Assembly (NCBI GenBank): GCA_946965045.2
Contig: OX337235.1
Span: 124,001-188,000, forward strand
Direction: 5' to 3'
From: Epithemia pelagica
Lineage: Eukaryota > Protista > Bacillariophyta
DNA: 64,000 bases
The translations under genes were made by a program, and so were the position numbers. Numbering within the stretch: the stretch's first letter is position 1; each line of letters begins with the position of its first letter. The notes beneath the pieces were generated by a model that did not search any database, was not told where the DNA came from, and saw only the letters and a program-made list of their open reading frames with translations. Positions 44,680 through 54,016 of this stretch are shown in pieces.

Positions 44680-45649
44680 TTTTTCGTATCATTCCAGCGA
44701 CAAACCAGTTTCATGTTTCACTCACAATACAAACGACGAAAAGTTCCATAATACACAAATAGTGATGTCTCGGTGACTATAACTACTGCTCCTAGCTTAT
44801 CGTAGTCGTCAAGGTTATTCAATCTCTCGCTAGATGCCATACGTGAACAACGACTCGGCTGCCCTTATCATTGAATGATGCACCAGGTAGCTCATGGCTG
44901 TGATGTCGGTAAACATGTCCTTGCCGTCGGTAATAATCTAAAAAGACATAGTATTATCCTGCCATGTCCGCAGAATGTTATTTGATCGCTTTCCAGTCTT
45001 ACGTTTAAGGCCCTGCGTCCAGGGAATGTGTTTTCGAGGTCTGAAATCGAGTTTCGAGTTTTGAGGTGGGGCCCTGTCCCTTCCTTGAAACAACGATCTG
45101 GATGTACGTGTCCAGGTAAAAACTGTATTTTCGAGTTTCGAGGTTCGAGTTTTATTTTTCAATACTCGTGCACTCCCATACTTCCCCCCCTACCGGCGCA
45201 TGAACGAGCACAACGGCAATTGACAATGACGACAAACAAATGTCGCTTGAGTACTCCTAATTCCTAATATCACATTGCATAACGGGAGAAGGTAGAATAT
45301 TTGTAGAGCCCGTCCATGGAGCAGGATGCGGGCTTTGTTCCGTAACCATGTCATCTATGGAGAGATGAGAACTATTTGCTTTTGACCATTGACAGTGGTT
45401 GTGACCATTACTTCCATGGCAGCGACAGGTTAATAATACTTGCTTATTTTCTAGAGAAGCTCCTACTTATATCACATCAATCATTGTGCTACTATTGTCT
45501 ATGATGGACAAGAGAGATTGCCTCGTTGTTGTTGTCGGAGAGATGGAAATGAGAGACAGAGAGCCCGGCGGCTGAAAGGTGGGTTTTGTAGGAGCGCGTG
45601 GGGCTCTTTGCAAACCTCGAAACTCGAAACTCGATTTCAGAATCTTGGC

Positions 45650-46410
45650 AAGGTGGGCTCCTTCATGCGGGTGGCGGAGGCGCGGCGAGAATCCCGCAAT
45701 AGGCTTAAGGCGCCCATGGCGCGCAGGGCTCTGTGCTCTTGCTACGCCGCTGTATCGCTGACAGGTAGATATGGCCCGTAGGGACAGTGCGCGTGGCTCT
45801 TCTGGAGCCCGCTGTGTCTTAGTAGGAGCGCTCCGCAGTGGCGCGAGCATGGATGCGCCGCCGCGCGCAGAGGCATTCTCCCCTGCTTTGGTGAGTGCGC
45901 ATGCTGGCTTGTGTAGGTTGCAGCTGCGCTTCTTGCTCTCCTTCTGTTTGGCAGGCGTCTGTCCGGCTGTTTTGGCGACTGCTTTTGGGGATGGATGGCG
46001 TGTCTTGGCCAGGCATTCTAGCGCGCTAGCAGCTTCCCAGGGCGCGCGCCTAGCCTAGCTCGCAGCGCAGAAGCCCTGCGCGCAGCTTGGTACTCAAAAT
46101 TGCTTTAGCATTGGGTATCGCGCACTCTTTCAAGATTTTCAGTCACGAGGATTATTGGGGGGATCGATGCACAGGCAGGTAGCAGCGCAGCGCCCGCCCT
46201 GTGCTAGCGGAGTGCCCGGCCTCCGCGCTGCTGGCGCGCGGCCCTTTATAAATGAAACTTAATCTTCTTCTTCTTTTGGAGCGTGGGCACTCCCATGCCA
46301 AGCCATCCTCCTATGTCATAAAAGTAACGCTGTGTGCTTGGACTAGCACCAAGCGGTCATTGGTGGCCACACGAGCGGCAAAAGGAGCATTGGGGGGGGG
46401 GGGGGGCACT
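45650..46410. other. GpC-rich, ApC/GpT-poor decayed sequence block
   Basis: 46021-46080 has about 16 GC and no AC or GT dinucleotides; origin not identified. Confidence 0.6.
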
Positions 46411-46909
46411 CTGCAGCTAGTAGCTAGCAGGAAAGTACAATCACAGTTGGTAGCGCGCCAAAAAAATTCTCGCGGGTTTCGCTTTGTTTTTTTGGCAATT
46501 TCGCGACCGAATCCGGGTTTGGGCATTTCTGGATCTGTACAGTAAGAAATGATACTGGCGATTTCAATTCATCGGAGGAAGATAAATGATTTTCTCGGGC
46601 AGAAACGGTATTGAATCCATCCTGATATGCCGTTGTTGAGAAAGATCGCGAAAACCGTTGTGAGGTAGCGTTAAGTGTGTCTGAAGTGTGTCTGAGGCTG
46701 GAGGCGGGATCGCACAAGAAGTTCCTACTAGAGAAATGCCATTTTCGCTGTTCGCGATTGATACCGCCCGAATCATCTTCGATCATACTGTAAAACAGCT
46801 GCTCGTTCTCACTCACTTTTTCCCCCGTAGCCATTATTCCAAAAAACGGAACGGTACTGATTGGCAGAGAGCGAGCTTGTGCCGCTACCAGTTGTATCCA
46901 CGCGAGATT

Positions 46910-46994
46910 GATTCGATTCTTCGAAGCAGATGTTCCGCCTGCTGCAACGCGGGAGATTCGATTCTTCGAAGCAGATGGCCTGACAGCTGCAACG
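46910..46994 (+). repeat. 45-bp tandem duplication
   Basis: gattcgattcttcgaagcagatg...gctgcaacg occurs twice. Confidence 0.85.
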
Positions 46995-47072
46995 AACAAA
47001 GATTCGTTGTCGCTACTACGTCGCATCAACCGTTGGATGTTAATAATTAAGGTCCTTGATACCGCATACGGC

Positions 47073-50000
47073 TATAGCTATCAAACTTAGGTACTCAGAT
47101 TTTTAGTGTAGTTTCTAAAGAAGTTTAGGTGAAACTTAGGTTTTGAAGTTTAGGTAGTTTAGGTAGCTATGAAATACGGCTCCTTCCCTCATTTTTTCGT
47201 AAGACGTAATAAAGACCAACAACACAACAGGTCCTCGTCTATATCAAAGGTAAACCATTGATTGACTTACACAGATCCAAAGAGATCACAATCAAGGTAT
47301 TGCTCATGGGTTGCTTGGCGGATAGTTGACCGCACGTTCAGCAGATACCGTAGGTTGAGCCCAACCCTGAGGCAAACCTCAGCCTTGTCCTGGCCAAGCG
47401 ATGCACGAAGTTTATTCCAAATATTATTTTTCAGAGGTTTAGCAACTCTCTCGACACAAATTGACCCTGTTGCCCTGACAGATAGGAGTGGTTCAATCAG
47501 CAATGGAAACACCTTTGTGGACGGTGCTATGCTGAAGAACTCCATCCGTCCTTGATACCATCCCGTGTCTTCGAGCCATTTGGCAACCATTTCAATGGTC
47601 AGCTGACACTCTTCTGCATTCTTGTCCATAGATGGCCGTGCCTTTTCTTTGTGGAACAGGTCAATCCAGTCTCCAGAACGACCTAGGTACGACCGAAGCT
47701 CCCTGTCGACAACAGTCTTGTTGCTCTGTGATGGTTCCAATTCTCGCTCAATTTCACGGATTGCTTGTTGGACCTCAGCAATATCTTCATCCCCATAGTC
47801 ATAGTTTGGGTTGTATTGAGGTGGACCTGGAGCTGGAGGAGGAGTTGCTGAGTTTGTTGGAGTTGCTGAGCCATCCTCGTGGACAAAGAAGTCGATTGCT
47901 TCTCGGACAGAACGAGCAAGGGAGGGAAGCAACGGACGGAATGGGATCATTGGGCGGAATGGGTCAACAATATACGCCCACACATGGTACTTGTCAAGTA
48001 GCCCAACTTTCCTTCCATTGGGTTGGACACCAGCGAAGTTGAAGCGGACATCAATACTGTCGAAAATTGATTCTTTTGCCCCAGGCACTGCAAACAGAGA
48101 ATCAAAAGATCGTGTTCCACTACTGTTCTTCATGACTTGGTGAATCTCGTTCCTCATTGCCACAACCAGTGGGTAGTATGCTGACAGTGGGAATTTCTCA
48201 CTTGATACCAGCTTCGTTCCATGTTCAATGACTTGGAATAGTTGAGTTAGGACATGAAGCTTCGCCCAGAAATCGCGATTGACCAATCGGAGAGCAGCAT
48301 CAAGCTTCTCCTGACGCTTCTTGTTCCTCGTATTGTAGTACTGCATGAACATAGGTGGATTGTTACAGCACCACTCGTAGAACTGCCTCTGTTTGGTTAT
48401 AGACATGAGTGTCATGCCGACTTTGTTGAATCTGGTGTCGGAGTAATTGGTCACATGACCACAAGACCGAGGGAGCTCTCCAGTTTGCACAAGCTCGTGC
48501 CGGATGCCATCGATGTTGTCTGTTGTGGAAAACTCCATGAGTAACTGAGCATCGGTCAGGACTGACTCAATGCATGGAACCTTTGCCAGATCTTTGGCCA
48601 CCAGGTCAATGCAGTGTGCACAGTCTCGGTTATGGAGAATACTAGGTTCTGATTTGTTGCGTTCTCTGTACTTCTCACATGCTCCTTTAACAATATTGTT
48701 GGCTGCGTTGTCACAAGCAACACAAACCACTGATGTATCAAAGTCGCGACGTGCTGTCTCCATAAAATCCACCATGTCCTCCACCTCTGCATCAGCCACA
48801 TGTGCTTCGTTTCGAAGTCTCGTGGCTCTACAAAACATAGTGACTGGACCCTTGGAGACTGTGTACAGAATGGTACTCGTACCATTTGCTGTCACACCGT
48901 CAGCAGCAATGGTAAGTCCACCCTGAATCTTGTGCAACATTTGCTTCAGCTCCTCACGACAGTTTCTATCAATGGGGAGAACAAATCGCTTGTATACAGT
49001 ATCGTGATGGTTGGGAAGGTGTCGAAGAATAGCCTTTCCCCAACGTGACACCATCTCGTCCTGGAAGAATGGGTCACTAACCCTGTTGAGTGGTTCGAAA
49101 CGTGCCAGCATCGTTTCGACGGACTTTGTGATTGCCTTGTTTGCAGTCACTTCGTTGACAATGTGGCCAAACTGCAGCATGGATGATTGCTGTGACGAAG
49201 ACTGTTTCTTGGTGGTGGTGATGGTGGATGGAGCCTTACGGGAACTACTACCATTGCTGACAACATTCTCACCACTGCCACTGCTGTTGCTGACAGAAGC
49301 CGACGACTCTTGACTCAATGGACCACCAACAATCAACCCGAGTTGCTTCTTGGCCCGCTTTGAAGCTTGTGTCGCGTCTTCACAACTGTCTTTGATGGTT
49401 GCAGGAACTTTACGACACTTGTGGATAATGTGGTTGGAGGCAACACTCGCGTTGAATGTTTTCCAGGATCGGAACTCTTTACAATGCACGCATACAACGG
49501 CCAGATACCCCTGTCGGTTGGGGTCTGGCCCGATCTTGAATTGATCTCGGACAAGTTGATTGGCCTTCTTTTTGGGAGGATTGACCTTTCGCTTTGCTCC
49601 CACCAGCACTTGCACTTCTGCCACTTCTTCGACATCCTCTGCAACCACCTCGTTGACATCGTTTTGGTTCGTCTGCGCCTCCAACATCTGCTGTTGGTCG
49701 TCTGTCAATGGAGATATATTGGCAAATGACGGGGAGGTACCAACGTCCTGCTCAACCTCCGTAAGGTTGTCCATGATGGTTATCAATGCTCGTCAGTGAT
49801 CACCACAGCAGCAATCACGACTTTTGTTTGGTTGTTGGATGAAGATGGAGGCGGGTACATGGTACATGGTTCCTGTCGATTCGAGACGGCAGATCATGTT
49901 TGGTTGGCAGAATGGACATCCACACGAAAGACCACTCGGAAGATATGGACGTTGACACCAACGTTCACAGACAGGATTCAATACATAGGCTAAATATTTA

Positions 50001-50111
50001 AAGGGCCACCCGAAACTTAGGTAAGGCCAAAGCAGCGTCATGAAACTTCGGAGAAACTTAGGTGCCGAAGTTTAGGCGGAGAAACTTCGGCGATGAAACT
50101 TGATACCTATA
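47073..50111 (-). mobile_element. Intact autonomous hAT DNA transposon (3039 bp)
   Basis: Perfect 8-bp TSD CATACGGC (47065-47072, 50112-50119). TIRs TATAG(C/G)TATCAA. Subterminal AACTTAGG/AAGTTTAGG repeats at both ends. Confidence 0.95.
47267..49774 (-). CDS. hAT transposase (BED finger, DUF659-like core, dimerization domain)
   Basis: CVHC...NHIIHKC BED-like finger; IAADG, CDNAAN, DCAHCIDL, TRF and CVERV motifs; uninterrupted ORF. Confidence 0.9.
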   Translation of the reverse strand: MDNLTEVEQDVGTSPSFANISPLTDDQQQMLEAQTNQNDVNEVVAEDVEEVAEVQVLVGAKRKVNPPKKKANQLVRDQFKIGPDPNRQGYLAVVCVHCKEFRSWKTFNASVASNHIIHKCRKVPATIKDSCEDATQASKRAKKQLGLIVGGPLSQESSASVSNSSGSGENVVSNGSSSRKAPSTITTTKKQSSSQQSSMLQFGHIVNEVTANKAITKSVETMLARFEPLNRVSDPFFQDEMVSRWGKAILRHLPNHHDTVYKRFVLPIDRNCREELKQMLHKIQGGLTIAADGVTANGTSTILYTVSKGPVTMFCRATRLRNEAHVADAEVEDMVDFMETARRDFDTSVVCVACDNAANNIVKGACEKYRERNKSEPSILHNRDCAHCIDLVAKDLAKVPCIESVLTDAQLLMEFSTTDNIDGIRHELVQTGELPRSCGHVTNYSDTRFNKVGMTLMSITKQRQFYEWCCNNPPMFMQYYNTRNKKRQEKLDAALRLVNRDFWAKLHVLTQLFQVIEHGTKLVSSEKFPLSAYYPLVVAMRNEIHQVMKNSSGTRSFDSLFAVPGAKESIFDSIDVRFNFAGVQPNGRKVGLLDKYHVWAYIVDPFRPMIPFRPLLPSLARSVREAIDFFVHEDGSATPTNSATPPPAPGPPQYNPNYDYGDEDIAEVQQAIREIERELEPSQSNKTVVDRELRSYLGRSGDWIDLFHKEKARPSMDKNAEECQLTIEMVAKWLEDTGWYQGRMEFFSIAPSTKVFPLLIEPLLSVRATGSICVERVAKPLKNNIWNKLRASLGQDKAEVCLRVGLNLRYLLNVRSTIRQATHEQYLDCDLFGSV

Positions 50112-50268
50112 CATACGGCGGTACCAAAAGTCGCAAACATGAGAAACAGCGACAGAAGTATGATATCATTCTCTCGTCATAAAATTTTGCATTTGTCATA
50201 ATTTTGCACAATCGAATCGATACGCATTCGTAAACTTCTTACAACGTATTCTCCATCAAAAGAAGATA

Positions 50269-51637
50269 ATGTTCATCAATCCACGTTCCGTCGTCGCAAC
50301 AACCACCGCAACCGCTTTGTTAGCAAACGGTTTTGGTGGCTTCTTGTCGATGATTCCCGCCTGCCAAGCCCAAGGAGCCAACGAGCCGTACGTTTGGGAT
50401 TTTGGTTTCTCGGAAAACATCCATGTCGATGGGGATTGTAATTACAGGTTGGAATTTACGCTGAAGCACAACGAGGACTTGCCGATCGGATGGACTCCAT
50501 CGAATTCGGAGATTGGAGCCTTGGAAAACTGCTACGTTTACAACGAAACCGGAGATTTCGTCGGCTTCTCGAACGCAACGGCCGAAATCGATGGAGTATC
50601 CTACCTGTTTCCCCGTCAAGATTACTATGAGTTCTCCGCCGAGGTGACGGCCGCGACCGGGCTTTTTGGCATTAACATCGACTTTAGTCCTTGCGGCCAT
50701 ATTCCCTTGGAAGCGTACGGCAGAGCGCACTACAACTATCATATTTACTATGTCGATCAAGTGTATCGTACAGGCACCATGAACTGTGATGGTGCTCCGC
50801 TATTCTGCGTGCCCCTAGAGGATCAAACGACACCCGAGGGAAAAGGTACGTAGTCAAGGCGAACCATTCTTGTTGATGTTGCTGCTGCTGCTGTTTCTTT
50901 TACTCCGTGGAATGAATAGTGTTGTCTCTATCAATACTAGTCTTACATTGTTTTGCTATCATCTAATCATCTGTTTGCTTGTATTTTCGTTCCCTTCGAA
51001 TCAAACCGAATTCATTTCATTCATTCATTACCATGCTGCAGCGTTCTACGAAATTGATTACACCGACGGAGAAGGATCAACAATTCGTAACATGCCCGAG
51101 GGTTTCGTTGTCGACCCTCGCACCGCATTCCCCAATATGGGAATCCATGCGTGGAAAGTATCCGACGACCCTGATGATGTGTCGACCTGGTCTGAACCCA
51201 GGTTGTGGATGGGCTCGTACGACAAGGACATCGCGTATCTCGAACCTATGTTCCCCCTGGAATTCGTGACGGGTGACGAAGACAACACGTGGGAAATCAC
51301 GCCAACGTACGTCGAACAAACGATCCCGTCGCTTCCCTCGAAGATCGGCATGTACTACAATGCCGAGACCGGGATTCTAACGAACTATCTAGAAGGGAAA
51401 AGCGAGGTTTGCATCATCGGAACTATCGACTGCGATAGCATTGATACCAAGAATGAATGCAACAAAAAATTTGGTTGTTTGTGGCAGCGGAAGAAGAATA
51501 AGAATAACTGCGGTCATGCCAAGACCAATACCGAATGCAAGAAGTATCGCAACAAAGAAAAGTGCAAGAAACGTGGTTGCGTCTGGAACAAGAAGGCGGA
51601 TGATGATAAGTGCAAGAGTCGTTGGGAAAAGCTTTAA
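50269..51637 (+). CDS. Secreted DUF5602/TTHB210-like protein with C-terminal Cys/Lys repeats; exons 50269-50845, 51042-51637
   Basis: Signal-like N-terminus; FSPCGH.P..AYG.AHYNYHIY and NMGIHAW motifs. GT-AG intron 50846-51041 joins in frame (EGK|AFYE). Two C..(6-7)C....C.W repeats. Confidence 0.75.
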
Positions 51638-51789
51638 CACCTCAATTCAAGAAGAAACATTGTCGTGTGGTGCGTGCAACAACTCGAACAAACAAACAAG
51701 ATCTGCAGTATGATGATAACAATTATTACATAAAAATAACCAAAGTAGCATTGTGCATGGAAAATTCACATAAGAGAAATAATAATAAT

Positions 51790-52860
51790 TCAGTTTGTTA
51801 ACATGCAGCAGAACCAAAGCCACATACAGATTAGATTTCCAGCTTCCGTGCTTCCTTCCTTTGCTTGCCTGCTTCGCTCAGGACTGTGCCCTGCTATGGC
51901 AGCCCGCTGGCTGCACTTGGAGGTGCTGCGCCTTATTGGGCTGCATCGATCCAATGCTCCCTCCGGCTGCGCCTTCCTAGTGGTGGCCCTTTTCTGCTTA
52001 GTATTATTCGGATTTTGCTATTCTGAATACTAATATGCTGCAGCTACCTACATGGGTGGCGGCCACCATGCGCCCATGGGTACTGGCCGCTGCCACTCTA
52101 GCGCATTGCTAGCTCATCCATCTAGCCTGGCTCCACAGCTCGGGGATTTTAAAATCATGCCATGCCTATGGAGTCCCATGGCTGATAGCCCATGGGATCA
52201 GCCAGCCTAGTAGCTTTGTAGCTTAGTGTAATCTAATATTGTGAGCTTAAGGGGGGGGGGGCCTGCAGCGCGGTATGGGAGAGCGCGGCTGCAAAGGGGT
52301 GCCCCCCAAGTGCCATTCCGCGGCATGCTTCCACCATTGCATTCATTGCCTTACACAATTCCAGCTGCTCCTGCGCCTCCTTGCAAGCTTTGCGCTGCGC
52401 TACTGCCGCCTCCTCCGCCATTGGCGGCGGCGGCTTGCTCTTGCTTACTTTTACTTGCTGGGCCGGCGCTGGTGCCCTGCTGCTGAGGCTACCAATGCGG
52501 CGGCGCTTCGCCACTCCACCGCTGAGCGCGGCTCGCCGGCGCTTGCCATTGCCACTGTGCCTTACTCTAGGCCTGGCTGGCTCCCATGAAGCCTCGCCAC
52601 GCTTGCTGCGCTTCGCTCCCAGCCTGCTTAGCGCACCTGCTGCATCATTATCTTTGCCAGCAGCATGCACAAGCTTTGGATGAAGCTCCTCCAGCAATAG
52701 CCTCCATCTAGTAAGCCTTTGGGAAGGCAGCTTCTTGCAGAGCAAGCTGAGATGGCCAGCACGCGCTGCAGCACCCACCCTAAGCAATGCTCCCTCAGAG
52801 GCCTTGCGCCCCCCGGCTATGCCTAGCATTTCCCGCTCGCCGGCGTTGGGGGATTGCCAA
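51790..52860 (-). mobile_element. Hypermutated Ty3/gypsy remnant (RNase H region ~52610-52850)
   Basis: GEREMLGI...AGHLSLLCKKLPSQRLTRWRLLLEELHPKLVHAAGKDNDAAGALSRL matches gypsy RNase H (E.ELL...TDH.NL.Y...SQR..RWRLLLEEF...H.AGKDN..ADALSR). Catalytic residues are lost. Confidence 0.85.
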
Positions 52861-54016
52861 GATTTGGGGGATTCGAGGTTGTGTTTTCGAGTTTTCAAGG
52901 GGACCATAACCTATTGGCTCAACCTCGAAACTCGAAACTCGATTTCAGAACTCAAAAACACATTCCCTGGACACAGGCCCTAAAGACGACATAGCTACCG
53001 GCACCAGGAATCCCTTGTCCCAAAATTTGGAGGTCGGCACTCGGCACGGGAGAACCGAGACAGTGACCGGAAAAAGATTAATAGGAGTATTACGGATTAC
53101 GGCAACAGAAGCCTGCGAACAAACTATCCATGGTCACTGAATTATTCAGCGGCTGAATACAATAACTTCCTTACCGGGAACACGCGAAACTATGTCGGCT
53201 ATGACCTCACGCGCCCTATGCTAGCAGACAAGGCAGCATTTTAGCTTAGTACTAGCTAAACAGCTCTAGTGCCTCGTCTCGGGTTGTGCCCATTTCGCCC
53301 TAGAAACACCCTTTGGGCACATAGTTTCAACTAGATAGAACATGATCAATATTAGGCCTACGACAACATGTGGATGCTCAAAGTTTTTCTTAAAGACATC
53401 CTCTGTCAACATTTGACCTTCCATTAGACCGGTATATTGCATATCTAGGTCATATGAGCACCTCCTTGGGGGGTGTTGTGCTCGATTTTTGGCTTGTGGG
53501 CACATGTGGGGACATGTGGGCACATGTGGGCACATTGTTTTGGAGAGTCGTACGACAGTCCTATGACCATGGTTGGATGTCGAAATCTTTAAGACATTCA
53601 GCAGACGACTTTAAAGCTTTTTTTTGTGCCATGGTCGACCTTAGGTCGACTTTCCAAACCTGTCCCGGACGGGTGTGGGATGCGCGATGCGCACTTTGGC
53701 GCGTCAATTCGGAACCCCGCGGCACGAAAAATCAAAAAATCTTGCGTGTTCGGCCCGTCCACTCTCATTCAACAATCCAACACCCAATTCTACAATGGTG
53801 TCGGACTTTTGAATAGTCCCCATCGGGACTGTTGCTTCATTTGATTGCAAGTCCGATGCACTCAAGAAATTGAAGCTTTGGGAAATGATCATTTCCAGAA
53901 GCTTCCATTTCTTGAGTGTAGCGGCAAAGACGACGTGGACAAGAACAACGCACAACGACGACAACATTCTTGGTGACAAGAACACAACATAAAGAACAGC
54001 AGCACCAGTGAGGACA

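What the first reader, a model, noticed from the sequence alone, without database searches (positions are those of the whole stretch)
51790..52860. Directional A>G / T>C (ApC/GpT to GpC) hypermutation of a gypsy remnant: candidate reverse-RIP-like genome defence
Seen: the gypsy RNase H is recognisable, but conserved residues differ by AT>GC transitions relative to the family consensus. TDH.N..Y reads GCT GGC CAT...AGC...TGC (T>A, D>G, N>S, Y>C, all AC>GC). Other changes are V>A (GT>GC), EF>EL (GAG TTT>GAG CTT), and Leu codons after G being CTN rather than TTR. A minority are in ApG/ApT context (Q>R, E>G, D>G). Hand count over 52681-52800: 17 GC versus 4 AC+GT dinucleotides. Both strands appear affected. 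Known: 5mC decay and fungal RIP give C>T, the opposite direction. Inference: a context-biased, TE-targeted mutational process such as adenine modification/deamination or biased repair. I do not know of a described system of this kind. The nearby intact hAT element, piggyBac-like element and host genes show no such skew.
Basis: partly seen in the sequence, partly recalled or inferred. Interest (0 to 1): 0.88.

Follow-up and report, generated by a model that had tools for sequence, protein, structure and literature searches.

The report
A:T-to-G:C hypermutated retrotransposon relic
A 1-kb stretch holding a dead gypsy retrotransposon fragment has had almost every A before C (and T after G) turned into G or C on both strands, a mutation pattern opposite to the known transposon-killing processes and not found described in the papers I could search.

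Summary
Window 51813-52843 has GpC at 1.75x expectation and ApC/GpT at 0.38x. Only 2 RAC/GTY trinucleotides remain where composition predicts 62. A second block (45650-46440) shows the same skew.

Polarised against normal-composition relatives from marine metagenomes, 24 of 28 changes at invariant sites are A>G or T>C. Both strands are hit equally, and NAC/GTN and RAT contexts are preferred. These changes ignore codon position; the other differences sit mostly at third positions.

Two metagenome contigs from other sources carry relics with the same signature, one with a sharp edge against a host gene. Public read assemblies reproduce the sequence exactly.

The "genome defence" reading is only partly supported:
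- Young multi-copy gypsy families in this genome decay by C>T, without the ApC bias.
- Such blocks look rare here.
- Only about 280 bp of the block is demonstrably gypsy.
- The adjoining MITE halves are untouched, so the mutation predates the present junctions.

The most likely cause is an enzyme-like, DNA-level conversion of adenine (or of its paired thymine) on particular TE-derived DNA. Polymerase error and regional bias remain rivals.

The scan had already noted the second block in this window. No other window of this genome was flagged.

The parts
51813..52843 (.). Block B2: GpC-saturated, RAC/GTY-free stretch (the finding)
   Evidence: GC O/E is 1.75 and AC/GT 0.38. There are 2 RAC/GTY against 62 expected. 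The last flank motif is at 51812 and the first on the other side at 52845.
52563..52843 (-). C-terminal part of a Ty3/gypsy RNase H domain plus about 25 residues of linker, hypermutated. TDH reads AGH and ADALSRL reads AGALSRL.
   Evidence: phmmer against 1.84 billion proteins gave 140 hits. The best normal relatives are 50-59% identical and carry PF17917/PF17919. An alignment that ignores transitions (bases collapsed to purine/pyrimidine) scores 133 against 38 +/- 4 for shuffles.
51813..52562 (.). Rest of B2: same composition, origin unidentified. No integrase or other gypsy similarity was detected.
   Evidence: tblastx and purine/pyrimidine-collapsed alignment to the P0004-type element L036 are not above shuffles. 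The stretch is single-copy in the genome.
52233..52907 (-). 224-aa open frame across the relic and into the MITE. It is probably spurious.
   Evidence: A>G and T>C changes cannot create stop codons, so long open frames appear in several frames. Pfam finds no domain. No RNA contig covers it.
45650..46440 (.). Block B1: second block with the same signature, weaker. Single-copy, no recognisable coding similarity.
   Evidence: GC O/E is 1.61 and AC/GT 0.58. There are 16 RAC/GTY against 48 expected. It is single-copy. It shows no similarity to B2, L035 or L036.
45002..45649 (.). Left part of a roughly 770-bp MITE-like TIR element, unmutated
   Evidence: 97% identical to a contiguous canonical copy in L020. 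The junction reads AAGGT|GGGCTCC.
52844..52990 (.). Right part of the same MITE-like element, unmutated. It directly abuts B2.
   Evidence: 139 of 139 bases are identical to L020. In L020 the two parts are joined (AAGGT-CGTTGG). No target-site duplication is visible. It is high-copy: contig depth 3000-16000 against about 120.
47072..50112 (-). Young nested hAT element (839-aa ORF with DUF659), normal composition
   Evidence: Two 100% identical copies lie on C11.
50870..51803 (+). Single-copy expressed gene between B1 and B2. Its poly(A) site at 51803 lies 10 bp before B2.
   Evidence: A metatranscriptome contig covers 51395-51803 and ends in a poly(A) run. The gene is single-copy. Its dinucleotide profile is host-like.

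Best explanation
B2, and probably B1, is TE-derived DNA that underwent near-saturating, strand-symmetric A:T>G:C transition hypermutation. B2 holds a fragment of a Ty3/gypsy element from a lineage that has no intact member in this genome.

Target preference (shown): A followed by C is hit most (RAC 83%, YAC 62%), then R-A-T (55%), then R-A-G (38%). Y-A-D sits at about 10%. The same preference appears on the opposite strand as T after G. The outcome is loss of ApC/GpT and GpA/TpC and gain of GpC and ApG/CpT.

Also shown:
- the direction of change;
- its indifference to codon position;
- the sharp edges;
- recurrence in two unrelated metagenome contigs.

Timing (inferred): the conversion happened before the segment was joined to the MITE sequences that now flank it. 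Those sequences are untouched to the base.

Mechanism (inferred): a sequence-preferring enzymatic base conversion on DNA. The simplest version is adenine deamination to hypoxanthine, which pairs with C. Conversion of the paired thymine to a G-pairing derivative would look the same. It acted on both strands of particular DNA molecules or repeated copies. That could have been extrachromosomal retroelement DNA before integration, or a homology-dependent (RIP-like) process at an earlier locus that spared the unique gene lying between the two blocks.

It is an episodic, copy-specific event. It is not a standing mutational regime of the genome.
For: Spectrum at invariant sites: 24 of 28 changes are A>G or T>C.

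Pairwise against the closest normal relative, L053: 45 A>G/T>C against 11 G>A/C>T. By context: RAC 10/12, YAC 8/13, RAT 12/22, RAG 6/16, RAA 4/20, YAD 4/41.

Strand symmetry on the coding strand: A>G at 35 of 88 A, T>C at 20 of 53 T.

Codon position: A>G/T>C fall 8/16/21 on positions 1/2/3. Other changes fall 15/7/26. This fits family divergence under selection followed by unselected hypermutation.

Saturation: 2 RAC/GTY in 1032 bp against 62 expected.

Edges: the MITE half is 139/139 identical to a canonical copy right at the junction. L035 switches from block to a host LRR gene within about 20 bp.

Independent cases: L035 (GC O/E 1.83, AC 0.37) and L049 (1.61, 0.44). L035 has no counterpart in this genome.

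Protein level: seven of 134 RNase H relatives show an excess of AT>GC-type replacements at conserved columns. The rest run 69 against 271 the other way.

All-or-none distribution: none of 80 further metagenome loci (306 kb) with relatives has such a block.

The resident families lack the signature.
Against: - No enzyme is identified. The genome has two A_deamin-domain genes, but these are ordinary tRNA/RNA-type deaminase domains with no extra domain. No Tet_JBP or MT-A70 match was found, in searches whose controls also found nothing.
- To my knowledge no natural DNA adenine deaminase is known in eukaryotes.
- About 70% of the block DNA has no identified ancestor, so its 'before' state is unknown.
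- FRAG (the RNase H relic in B2) and L035 share 34 AT>GC changes against 18 and 12 private ones. That is more sharing than simple independence predicts. Part of the mutated state could therefore be inherited from a common, already mutated ancestor, and the three cases may not be three independent events.
- The geometry is unexplained: two blocks at the two ends of a 7.2-kb insert in a MITE, with a normal gene in between.
- Rarity in this genome was judged from a crude probe only.
Confidence: 0.45

Rival explanations
1. Polymerase error rather than base conversion. Reverse transcription, or another error-prone synthesis, ran with a skewed dNTP pool (dGTP/dCTP high). It repeatedly placed G opposite template T where the next template base is G. 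Minus-strand synthesis then gives U>C at GpU. Plus-strand synthesis gives A>G at ApC. One kind of mispair would explain both directions, the symmetry and the restriction to a retroelement.
For: - Both A>G and T>C appear on the coding strand at equal rates, with reverse-complementary contexts.
- The block holds a retroelement fragment.
- The event predates the present junctions.
- Hypermutagenesis by reverse transcriptase under biased dNTP pools is an established in vitro phenomenon. It is cited as reference 68 in PMC3511177. I could not read the paper itself, so its details rest on my own knowledge.
- A-to-G retroviral hypermutants have occasionally been reported (PMC4496919).
Against: - About 97% loss of one trinucleotide class, with Y-A-D sites at about 10%, is a steeper and more complete context dependence than misincorporation is known to give.
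- Most of the block is not recognisably retroelement, and the expected adjoining integrase is absent.
- A dead copy would need repeated rounds in trans to reach saturation.
Confidence: 0.15
2. A long-acting local process in place. Candidates are a chromatin- or modification-dependent mutation bias, or biased T:G mismatch repair of the very-short-patch kind linked to GpC methylation. Either would slowly drive silenced DNA to a GpC-rich equilibrium, while selection protected the gene between the blocks.
For: - The two blocks flank a normal-composition expressed gene.
- CpG is depleted and TpG/CpA raised inside the blocks, as expected for methylated DNA.
- B1 is less complete than B2, as in a gradual process.
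Against: - The MITE halves adjoining both blocks are unmutated to the base. The non-coding stretches 46441-47071 and 50113-50870 are normal.
- Silenced young gypsy copies show C>T and no ApC>GpC.
- Intergenic background has GC O/E 0.85.
- A process in place would have to stop exactly at junctions that are younger than the block.
Confidence: 0.13
3. No hypermutation. The blocks are foreign or lineage-specific DNA whose native composition is GpC-rich and RAC-poor, and the gypsy fragment merely belongs to such a lineage.
For: - The lineage (P0004/L053-like) has no intact member in this genome.
- The three GpC-type copies resemble each other more than they resemble normal relatives, and share many changes.
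- TpA is not depleted in the blocks, unlike in the host.
Against: - Each replacement is exactly one A>G or T>C step.
- The changes ignore codon position, whereas the remaining differences are mainly at third positions.
- Neither 140 protein hits nor 80 loci include a functional relative with this composition.
Confidence: 0.08
4. ADAR-type A-to-I hyperediting of double-stranded retroelement RNA, fixed in the genome by reverse transcription and integration.
For: The A>G direction fits. The genome encodes A_deamin-domain proteins. A retroelement fragment is present.
Against: - Only the packaged sense RNA is copied, so A>G should appear on the sense strand alone. Here T>C is equally frequent on that strand.
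- A 5' purine, including G, is favoured and a 3' C is strongly favoured. ADARs disfavour a 5' G (established knowledge).
- No dsRNA-binding domain sits in the deaminase gene that I examined.
Confidence: 0.04
5. An assembly or base-calling artefact at heavily modified DNA.
For: Modified bases can cause systematic A>G-type miscalls in some long-read assemblies (general knowledge).
Against: Contigs from two public runs, and from an independent metagenome study, match with zero differences. The same signature sits in short-read metagenome assemblies from other projects.
Confidence: 0.02

Closest known systems
Repeat-induced point mutation (RIP) of Neurospora and other fungi
   Same: Transitions at the DNA level on both strands. 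A dinucleotide context. It can approach saturation. It is confined to repeated or TE DNA with fairly sharp limits, and unique genes next to it are spared.
   Different: The direction is opposite: C:G>T:A at CpA in RIP, A:T>G:C at ApC/GpT here. The result is GC-rich rather than AT-rich. Multi-copy, near-identical resident families in this genome are untouched. Dependence on duplication is not shown. No RID-like enzyme is implicated.
APOBEC3-type hypermutation of retroviruses and LTR retrotransposons, preserved as genomic fossils (PMC4866542)
   Same: All-or-none hypermutation of single retroelement copies. Sequence-context preference. Dead relics are left in the genome.
   Different: APOBEC3 deaminates cytosine on minus-strand cDNA, which gives G>A on the plus strand only. 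Here adenine or thymine positions change, and they change symmetrically.
ADAR hyperediting and A-to-G retroviral hypermutants (mentioned in PMC4496919)
   Same: Clusters of A>G.
   Different: ADAR editing is strand-specific after retrotransposition, and its neighbour preferences differ (a 5' G is disfavoured). The pattern here is symmetric with an R-A-C optimum.
Reverse-transcriptase hypermutagenesis with biased dNTP pools (Martinez et al. 1994, cited in PMC3511177; details from my own knowledge)
   Same: It can give transition hypermutants of either direction, with next-nucleotide context effects. It would affect both strands of the cDNA.
   Different: Known mainly in vitro and for G>A in vivo. 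Near-complete conversion of one trinucleotide class has not been described.
Engineered adenine base editors derived from tRNA deaminase TadA (e.g. PMC12060317)
   Same: A:T>G:C conversion in DNA through deoxyinosine. TadA itself acts on an A followed by C.
   Different: These are laboratory-evolved enzymes. The natural enzyme acts on tRNA and prefers a 5' pyrimidine (U-A-C). Here a 5' purine is at least as good.

Membership tests
Ty3/gypsy RNase H (Pfam RT_RNaseH PF17917 / RT_RNaseH_2 PF17919) | Significant sequence similarity to the domain | tested here: met
   phmmer E = 9e-17 to 5e-16 to relatives that carry PF17917/PF17919 and that continue into integrase in P0004. Pfam itself does not recognise the mutated ORF.
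Ty3/gypsy RNase H (Pfam RT_RNaseH PF17917 / RT_RNaseH_2 PF17919) | Conserved TDH and ADALSRL motifs intact, and adjoining RT and integrase present | tested here: not met
   TDH reads AGH and ADALSRL reads AGALSRL. No RT or integrase similarity lies on either side. It is a dead fragment, not an element.
Fungal-type RIP | C:G>T:A transitions, mainly at CpA/TpG | tested here: not met
   The changes are A:T>G:C: 24 of 28 at invariant sites, with G>A plus C>T = 1.
Fungal-type RIP | Both strands affected; confined to the repeated segment | tested here: met
   A>G and T>C rates are equal on the coding strand. The edges are sharp.
Fungal-type RIP | Triggered by sequence duplication in the same genome | tested here: inconclusive
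   The blocks are now single-copy. Present-day multi-copy families are not affected. The state at the time of the event is unknown.
APOBEC-type cDNA editing | G>A on the plus strand only | tested here: not met
   G>A plus C>T account for 1 of 28 changes, and the pattern is symmetric.
ADAR hyperediting fixed by retrotransposition | A>G confined to the sense strand | tested here: not met
   T>C occurs at 38% of T against A>G at 40% of A on the coding strand.
ADAR hyperediting fixed by retrotransposition | 5' neighbour U/A preferred and G disfavoured | tested here: not met
   A 5' purine, G included, is preferred: GAC is at 0.05-0.07 of expectation. R-A-D is converted at 35% against Y-A-D at 19%.
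Adenine deamination on DNA (hypothetical natural counterpart of base editors) | A deaminase acting on DNA adenine, and inosine in the DNA | not testable with these tools
   Only candidate domains could be listed. No biochemical or modification data exist here.

The most novel reading that the evidence does not exclude
Some marine protists have, or had, a natural DNA-level pathway that inactivates retroelement-derived DNA by converting A:T to G:C at R-A-Y/N-A-C sites on both strands. It would be a mirror image of RIP and APOBEC editing. It would imply a natural DNA adenine deaminase, or a thymine-modifying enzyme with the same outcome.
Probability: 0.3. Interest if true: 0.9.

Novelty: new variant of a known kind. 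Interest (0 to 1): 0.7.

Why it matters
All described TE or retrovirus hypermutation systems remove G:C pairs (RIP, APOBEC, 5mC decay), or act on one RNA strand (ADAR). A strand-symmetric, context-specific, near-saturating A:T>G:C conversion confined to TE-derived DNA would be a new entry in that list.

If it is enzymatic, it would point to a natural activity on DNA adenine or thymine. So far such an activity has had to be evolved in the laboratory for base editing.

There is also a practical point. Because the process destroys stop codons, such relics produce long spurious ORFs that gene callers annotate as proteins. Here that is a 219-aa database entry.

Even the modest readings are of interest. 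A polymerase-error hypermutant would be the first genomic fossil of that kind in this direction.

Tried and rejected
- Pattern probes for GpC-dense DNA were tried.
  - GCNGCNNGCNNGC gave 761 genome hits. In the roughly 8.6 Mb listed there were no clusters. This suggests rarity, but it is crude.
  - The CTAGC-based probe was unspecific.
- Comparison with the in-genome gypsy families gave only 46% nucleotide identity with many transversions. It is not a usable reference.
- Pfam on the ORF found nothing relevant. Rfam on 44900-53300 found nothing.
- tblastx and purine/pyrimidine-collapsed alignments were run for B1, the rest of B2 and the upstream part of L035, against L036, against resident gypsy loci and against each other. 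None showed real similarity. Two apparent z = 3-5 scores turned out to be 37%-identity noise.
- Terminal inverted or direct repeats between B1 and B2: none beyond a G-run + CTGCAGC motif.
- An orthologue of the L035 LRR gene in this genome: not found with this query.
- Scan notes elsewhere in this genome mentioning GpC: none.
- Literature: five searches found no description. The two original hypermutagenesis papers are not held.
- Eighty further metagenome loci with relatives: none has a GpC-type block.
- The strand-coordinated ssDNA (resected-end) model is rejected, because both strands are hit within each block.

Full report
**What is there**

Window 51813-52843 (block B2) is compositionally unlike everything around it.
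- GpC is at 1.75-1.77 times expectation.
- ApC/GpT is at 0.33-0.53, GpA/TpC at about 0.6 and CpG at 0.58.
- ApG/CpT and CpA/TpG are raised.

At the trinucleotide level the loss is concentrated in R-A-C/G-T-Y. AAC is at 0.03 and GAC at 0.05 of the window's frequency. AGC, GGC, CGC and TGC are 2.4 to 4.4 times enriched.

Only 2 RAC/GTY trinucleotides remain in 1032 bp. Shuffles of the block's own bases give 62 +/- 6. The flanks carry about one per 13 bp, right up to 51812 and from 52845 on.

A second block, 45650-46440 (B1), has the same signature in weaker form. Nothing else in the 64 kb does.

**The sequence is real**

Logan contigs of two runs of the organism cover 51000-52869 at depth about 120 without a single difference. 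A contig from an unrelated biofilm metagenome covers 52474-52692, also without difference.

**What the block is made of**

On the minus strand, 52563-52843 encodes the C-terminal part of a Ty3/gypsy RNase H.

The resident gypsy families of this genome are poor references. They are 39-42% identical at the protein level and 46% at the nucleotide level. They use different synonymous codons for conserved residues and differ by many transversions.

An exhaustive protein search found the true relatives in marine and other metagenomes:
- P0004, an RT-RNase H-integrase protein on contig L036;
- P0002, P0003, P0008 and P0012;
- later L053, at 57% identity.

All have ordinary composition. This lineage has no intact member in the genome.

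The rest of B2 (51813-52562) and all of B1 match nothing. They match neither the integrase that should follow, nor L036, nor each other. This holds even when purines and pyrimidines are collapsed so that transitions become invisible. The RNase H piece scores 133 against 38 +/- 4 in the same test.

So about 280 bp is demonstrably gypsy. The remainder shares the signature, but its ancestry is unknown.

**Direction and context of the changes**

I compared copies site by site. Per-column majority states of five relatives were used only in memory, over about 300 nt, to polarise counts.

At 101 sites invariant in at least three normal relatives, the fragment differs at 28: 14 A>G, 10 T>C and 4 others. 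Each normal relative treated the same way shows no bias (Fisher p = 1.6e-5).

On the coding strand 40% of A and 38% of T are converted, so both strands were hit equally.

Against the closest relative, L053, there are 45 A>G/T>C changes against 11 G>A/C>T. By the unmutated neighbours:

| Context | Converted |
|---|---|
| RAC | 10/12 |
| YAC | 8/13 |
| RAT | 12/22 |
| RAG | 6/16 |
| RAA | 4/20 |
| YAA + YAG + YAT | 4/41 |

The pooled estimate from two mutated copies agrees.

The A>G/T>C changes fall 8/16/21 on codon positions 1/2/3. The other differences fall 15/7/26. This is what one expects from ordinary family divergence under selection, followed by a burst of unselected mutation.

One process explains the whole dinucleotide profile: A to G with a 3' C (or T) and a 5' purine preference, plus CpG decay.

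Because such changes cannot create stop codons, the block is full of long open frames. One is the 224-aa ORF that a database lists as a protein.

**Recurrence elsewhere**

*L035.* Contig L035 (protein P0005) is a 2.9-kb short-read metagenome contig. It carries a block of at least 1.6 kb with the same profile: GC 1.83, AC 0.37, and four RAC/GTY in 1360 bp. Within about 20 bp this switches to a host-like LRR gene of normal composition. It has no counterpart in this genome.

*L049.* The Tara contig L049 (P0078) shows the signature too.

*Protein level.* Seven of 134 relatives show an excess of AT>GC-type replacements at conserved columns. The rest run 69 against 271 in the other direction. My query was itself mutated, which favours finding such copies.

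*Further loci.* None of 80 further loci (306 kb) with relatives has a block.

The distribution is therefore all-or-none: single copies converted to saturation, most copies untouched.

One caveat applies. The window's fragment and L035 share 34 AT>GC changes against 18 and 12 private ones. Some of the mutated state may be inherited rather than parallel.

**Not a standing TE defence here**

The resident gypsy loci, broken ones included, have GC/(AC+GT) of about 0.5.

Private changes were counted among 11 and 8 copies of two young families. There are 77 and 88 C>T, enriched at CpG, against 39 and 43 A>G. Only 5 and 10 of those A>G lie before C.

A probe that hits B1 and B2 three times each finds 761 sites in the 60.5-Mb genome. 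In the roughly 8.6 Mb that the tool listed there were no clusters. A proper genome-wide scan could not be run.

**Timing and setting**

A canonical copy of a roughly 770-bp MITE-like element (locus L020) is contiguous across AAGGT-CGTTGG. In the window the same two parts (45002-45649 and 52844-52990) are separated by 7.2 kb. That insert begins with B1 and ends with B2, and shows no target-site duplication.

The MITE parts are 97% and 100% identical to L020 right up to the junctions. The conversion therefore did not happen in the present context.

Inside the insert:
- 47072-50112 is a hAT element with 100% identical copies elsewhere. It is a recent nested insertion.
- The remaining 2.3 kb is single-copy, has a host-like composition and holds an expressed gene. 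Its poly(A) site at 51803 lies 10 bp before B2.

I cannot explain why two converted blocks bracket a normal gene. A homology-dependent process that spared unique DNA at an earlier locus would fit. So would later insertion of the gene segment.

**Mechanism**

Shown:
- the direction of change;
- strand symmetry;
- the context hierarchy;
- saturation;
- sharp limits;
- absence from the flanks and from resident families.

Inferred: an enzyme-like conversion on DNA, most simply adenine deamination to hypoxanthine. An equivalent change of the paired thymine cannot be told apart from it by sequence.

How the alternatives fare:
- The steep hierarchy, with near-complete loss of the best motif, looks like a sequence-preferring enzyme at high dose or over repeated rounds. 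It looks less like misincorporation.
- A single G:T mispair at template 5'-GT during both steps of reverse transcription would still explain the symmetry neatly. It remains the main rival.
- ADAR editing is contradicted by the symmetry and by the preference for a 5' G.
- A process in place is contradicted by the untouched MITE junctions.
- A native composition is contradicted by one-step replacements of residues that are invariant in functional relatives, and by the indifference to codon position.

Candidate genes are only a list. There are two A_deamin-domain genes without extra domains. No Tet_JBP or MT-A70 match was found, in searches whose controls were silent too.

**Comparison with what is known**

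The pattern works most like RIP: DNA level, both strands, dinucleotide context, TE-limited, saturating. It fails RIP's defining direction and spares today's repeats.

It resembles APOBEC fossils in being copy-specific, but it is symmetric and affects A:T pairs.

Five full-text searches found no description of ApC/GpT>GpC hypermutation of TEs.

**Verdict**

I rate it a new variant of a known kind, TE hypermutation, with interest 0.7.

Noticed in passing
window 45002-45649 and 52844-52990; L020:1426-2196: One copy of a roughly 770-bp MITE-like TIR element is split by a 7.2-kb insert exactly between AAGGT and CGTTGG. No target-site duplication is visible. The insert's two ends are the two GpC blocks. 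How a segment holding a single-copy expressed gene came to lie inside a MITE is unexplained (DSB-repair capture or a Pack-type element?).
   Followed up: partly
window 47072-50112: A hAT element (839-aa ORF with DUF659) has two 100% identical copies on C11 and copies of 93-99% identity elsewhere. It is evidently a currently or very recently active family.
   Followed up: partly
window 50870-51803: A single-copy gene encodes a protein with a Cys/Lys-rich C-terminus and no Pfam domain. A marine metatranscriptome contig matches 51395-51803, ends in poly(A) at 51803 and carries a 15-nt insertion after 51488, probably an allele.
   Followed up: no
L047, L048, L050, L051 (metagenome contigs): There is a second, different kind of AT>GC-looking gypsy relic. 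TpA O/E is 0.06-0.13, CpA/TpG is 1.3-1.7 and CpG is 0.3-0.9. Replacements of Y>C, H>R and L>P type occur at conserved positions. This could be TpA>CpA/TpG conversion, the literal reverse of RIP, or simply the composition of that host.
   Followed up: partly
window 46395-46417 and 52250-52268: Both blocks contain, in the same orientation, a run of 11-15 G followed by (CACT)CTGCAGC. This is the only similarity between B1 and B2. It resembles a polypurine tract, but its orientation does not fit the RNase H fragment.
   Followed up: partly
window 52233-52907 (-): The 224-aa ORF, a 219-aa entry in the protein collection, runs from MITE sequence through the mutated RNase H relic into unidentified DNA. 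It is very likely a gene-calling artefact favoured by the loss of stop codons under A>G/T>C mutation.
   Followed up: partly
G000:C6:2910141-2911598 (L052:509-2527, -) and G000:C1:5816609-5817799: Two genes carry an adenosine-deaminase (editase) domain. The C6 one is a 672-aa ORF with long insertions and no other Pfam domain.
   Followed up: partly
L035:1-50: The first roughly 45 nt of the metagenome contig match a short repeat present at many sites of this genome at 88-97% identity, although the rest of the contig has no counterpart here.
   Followed up: no
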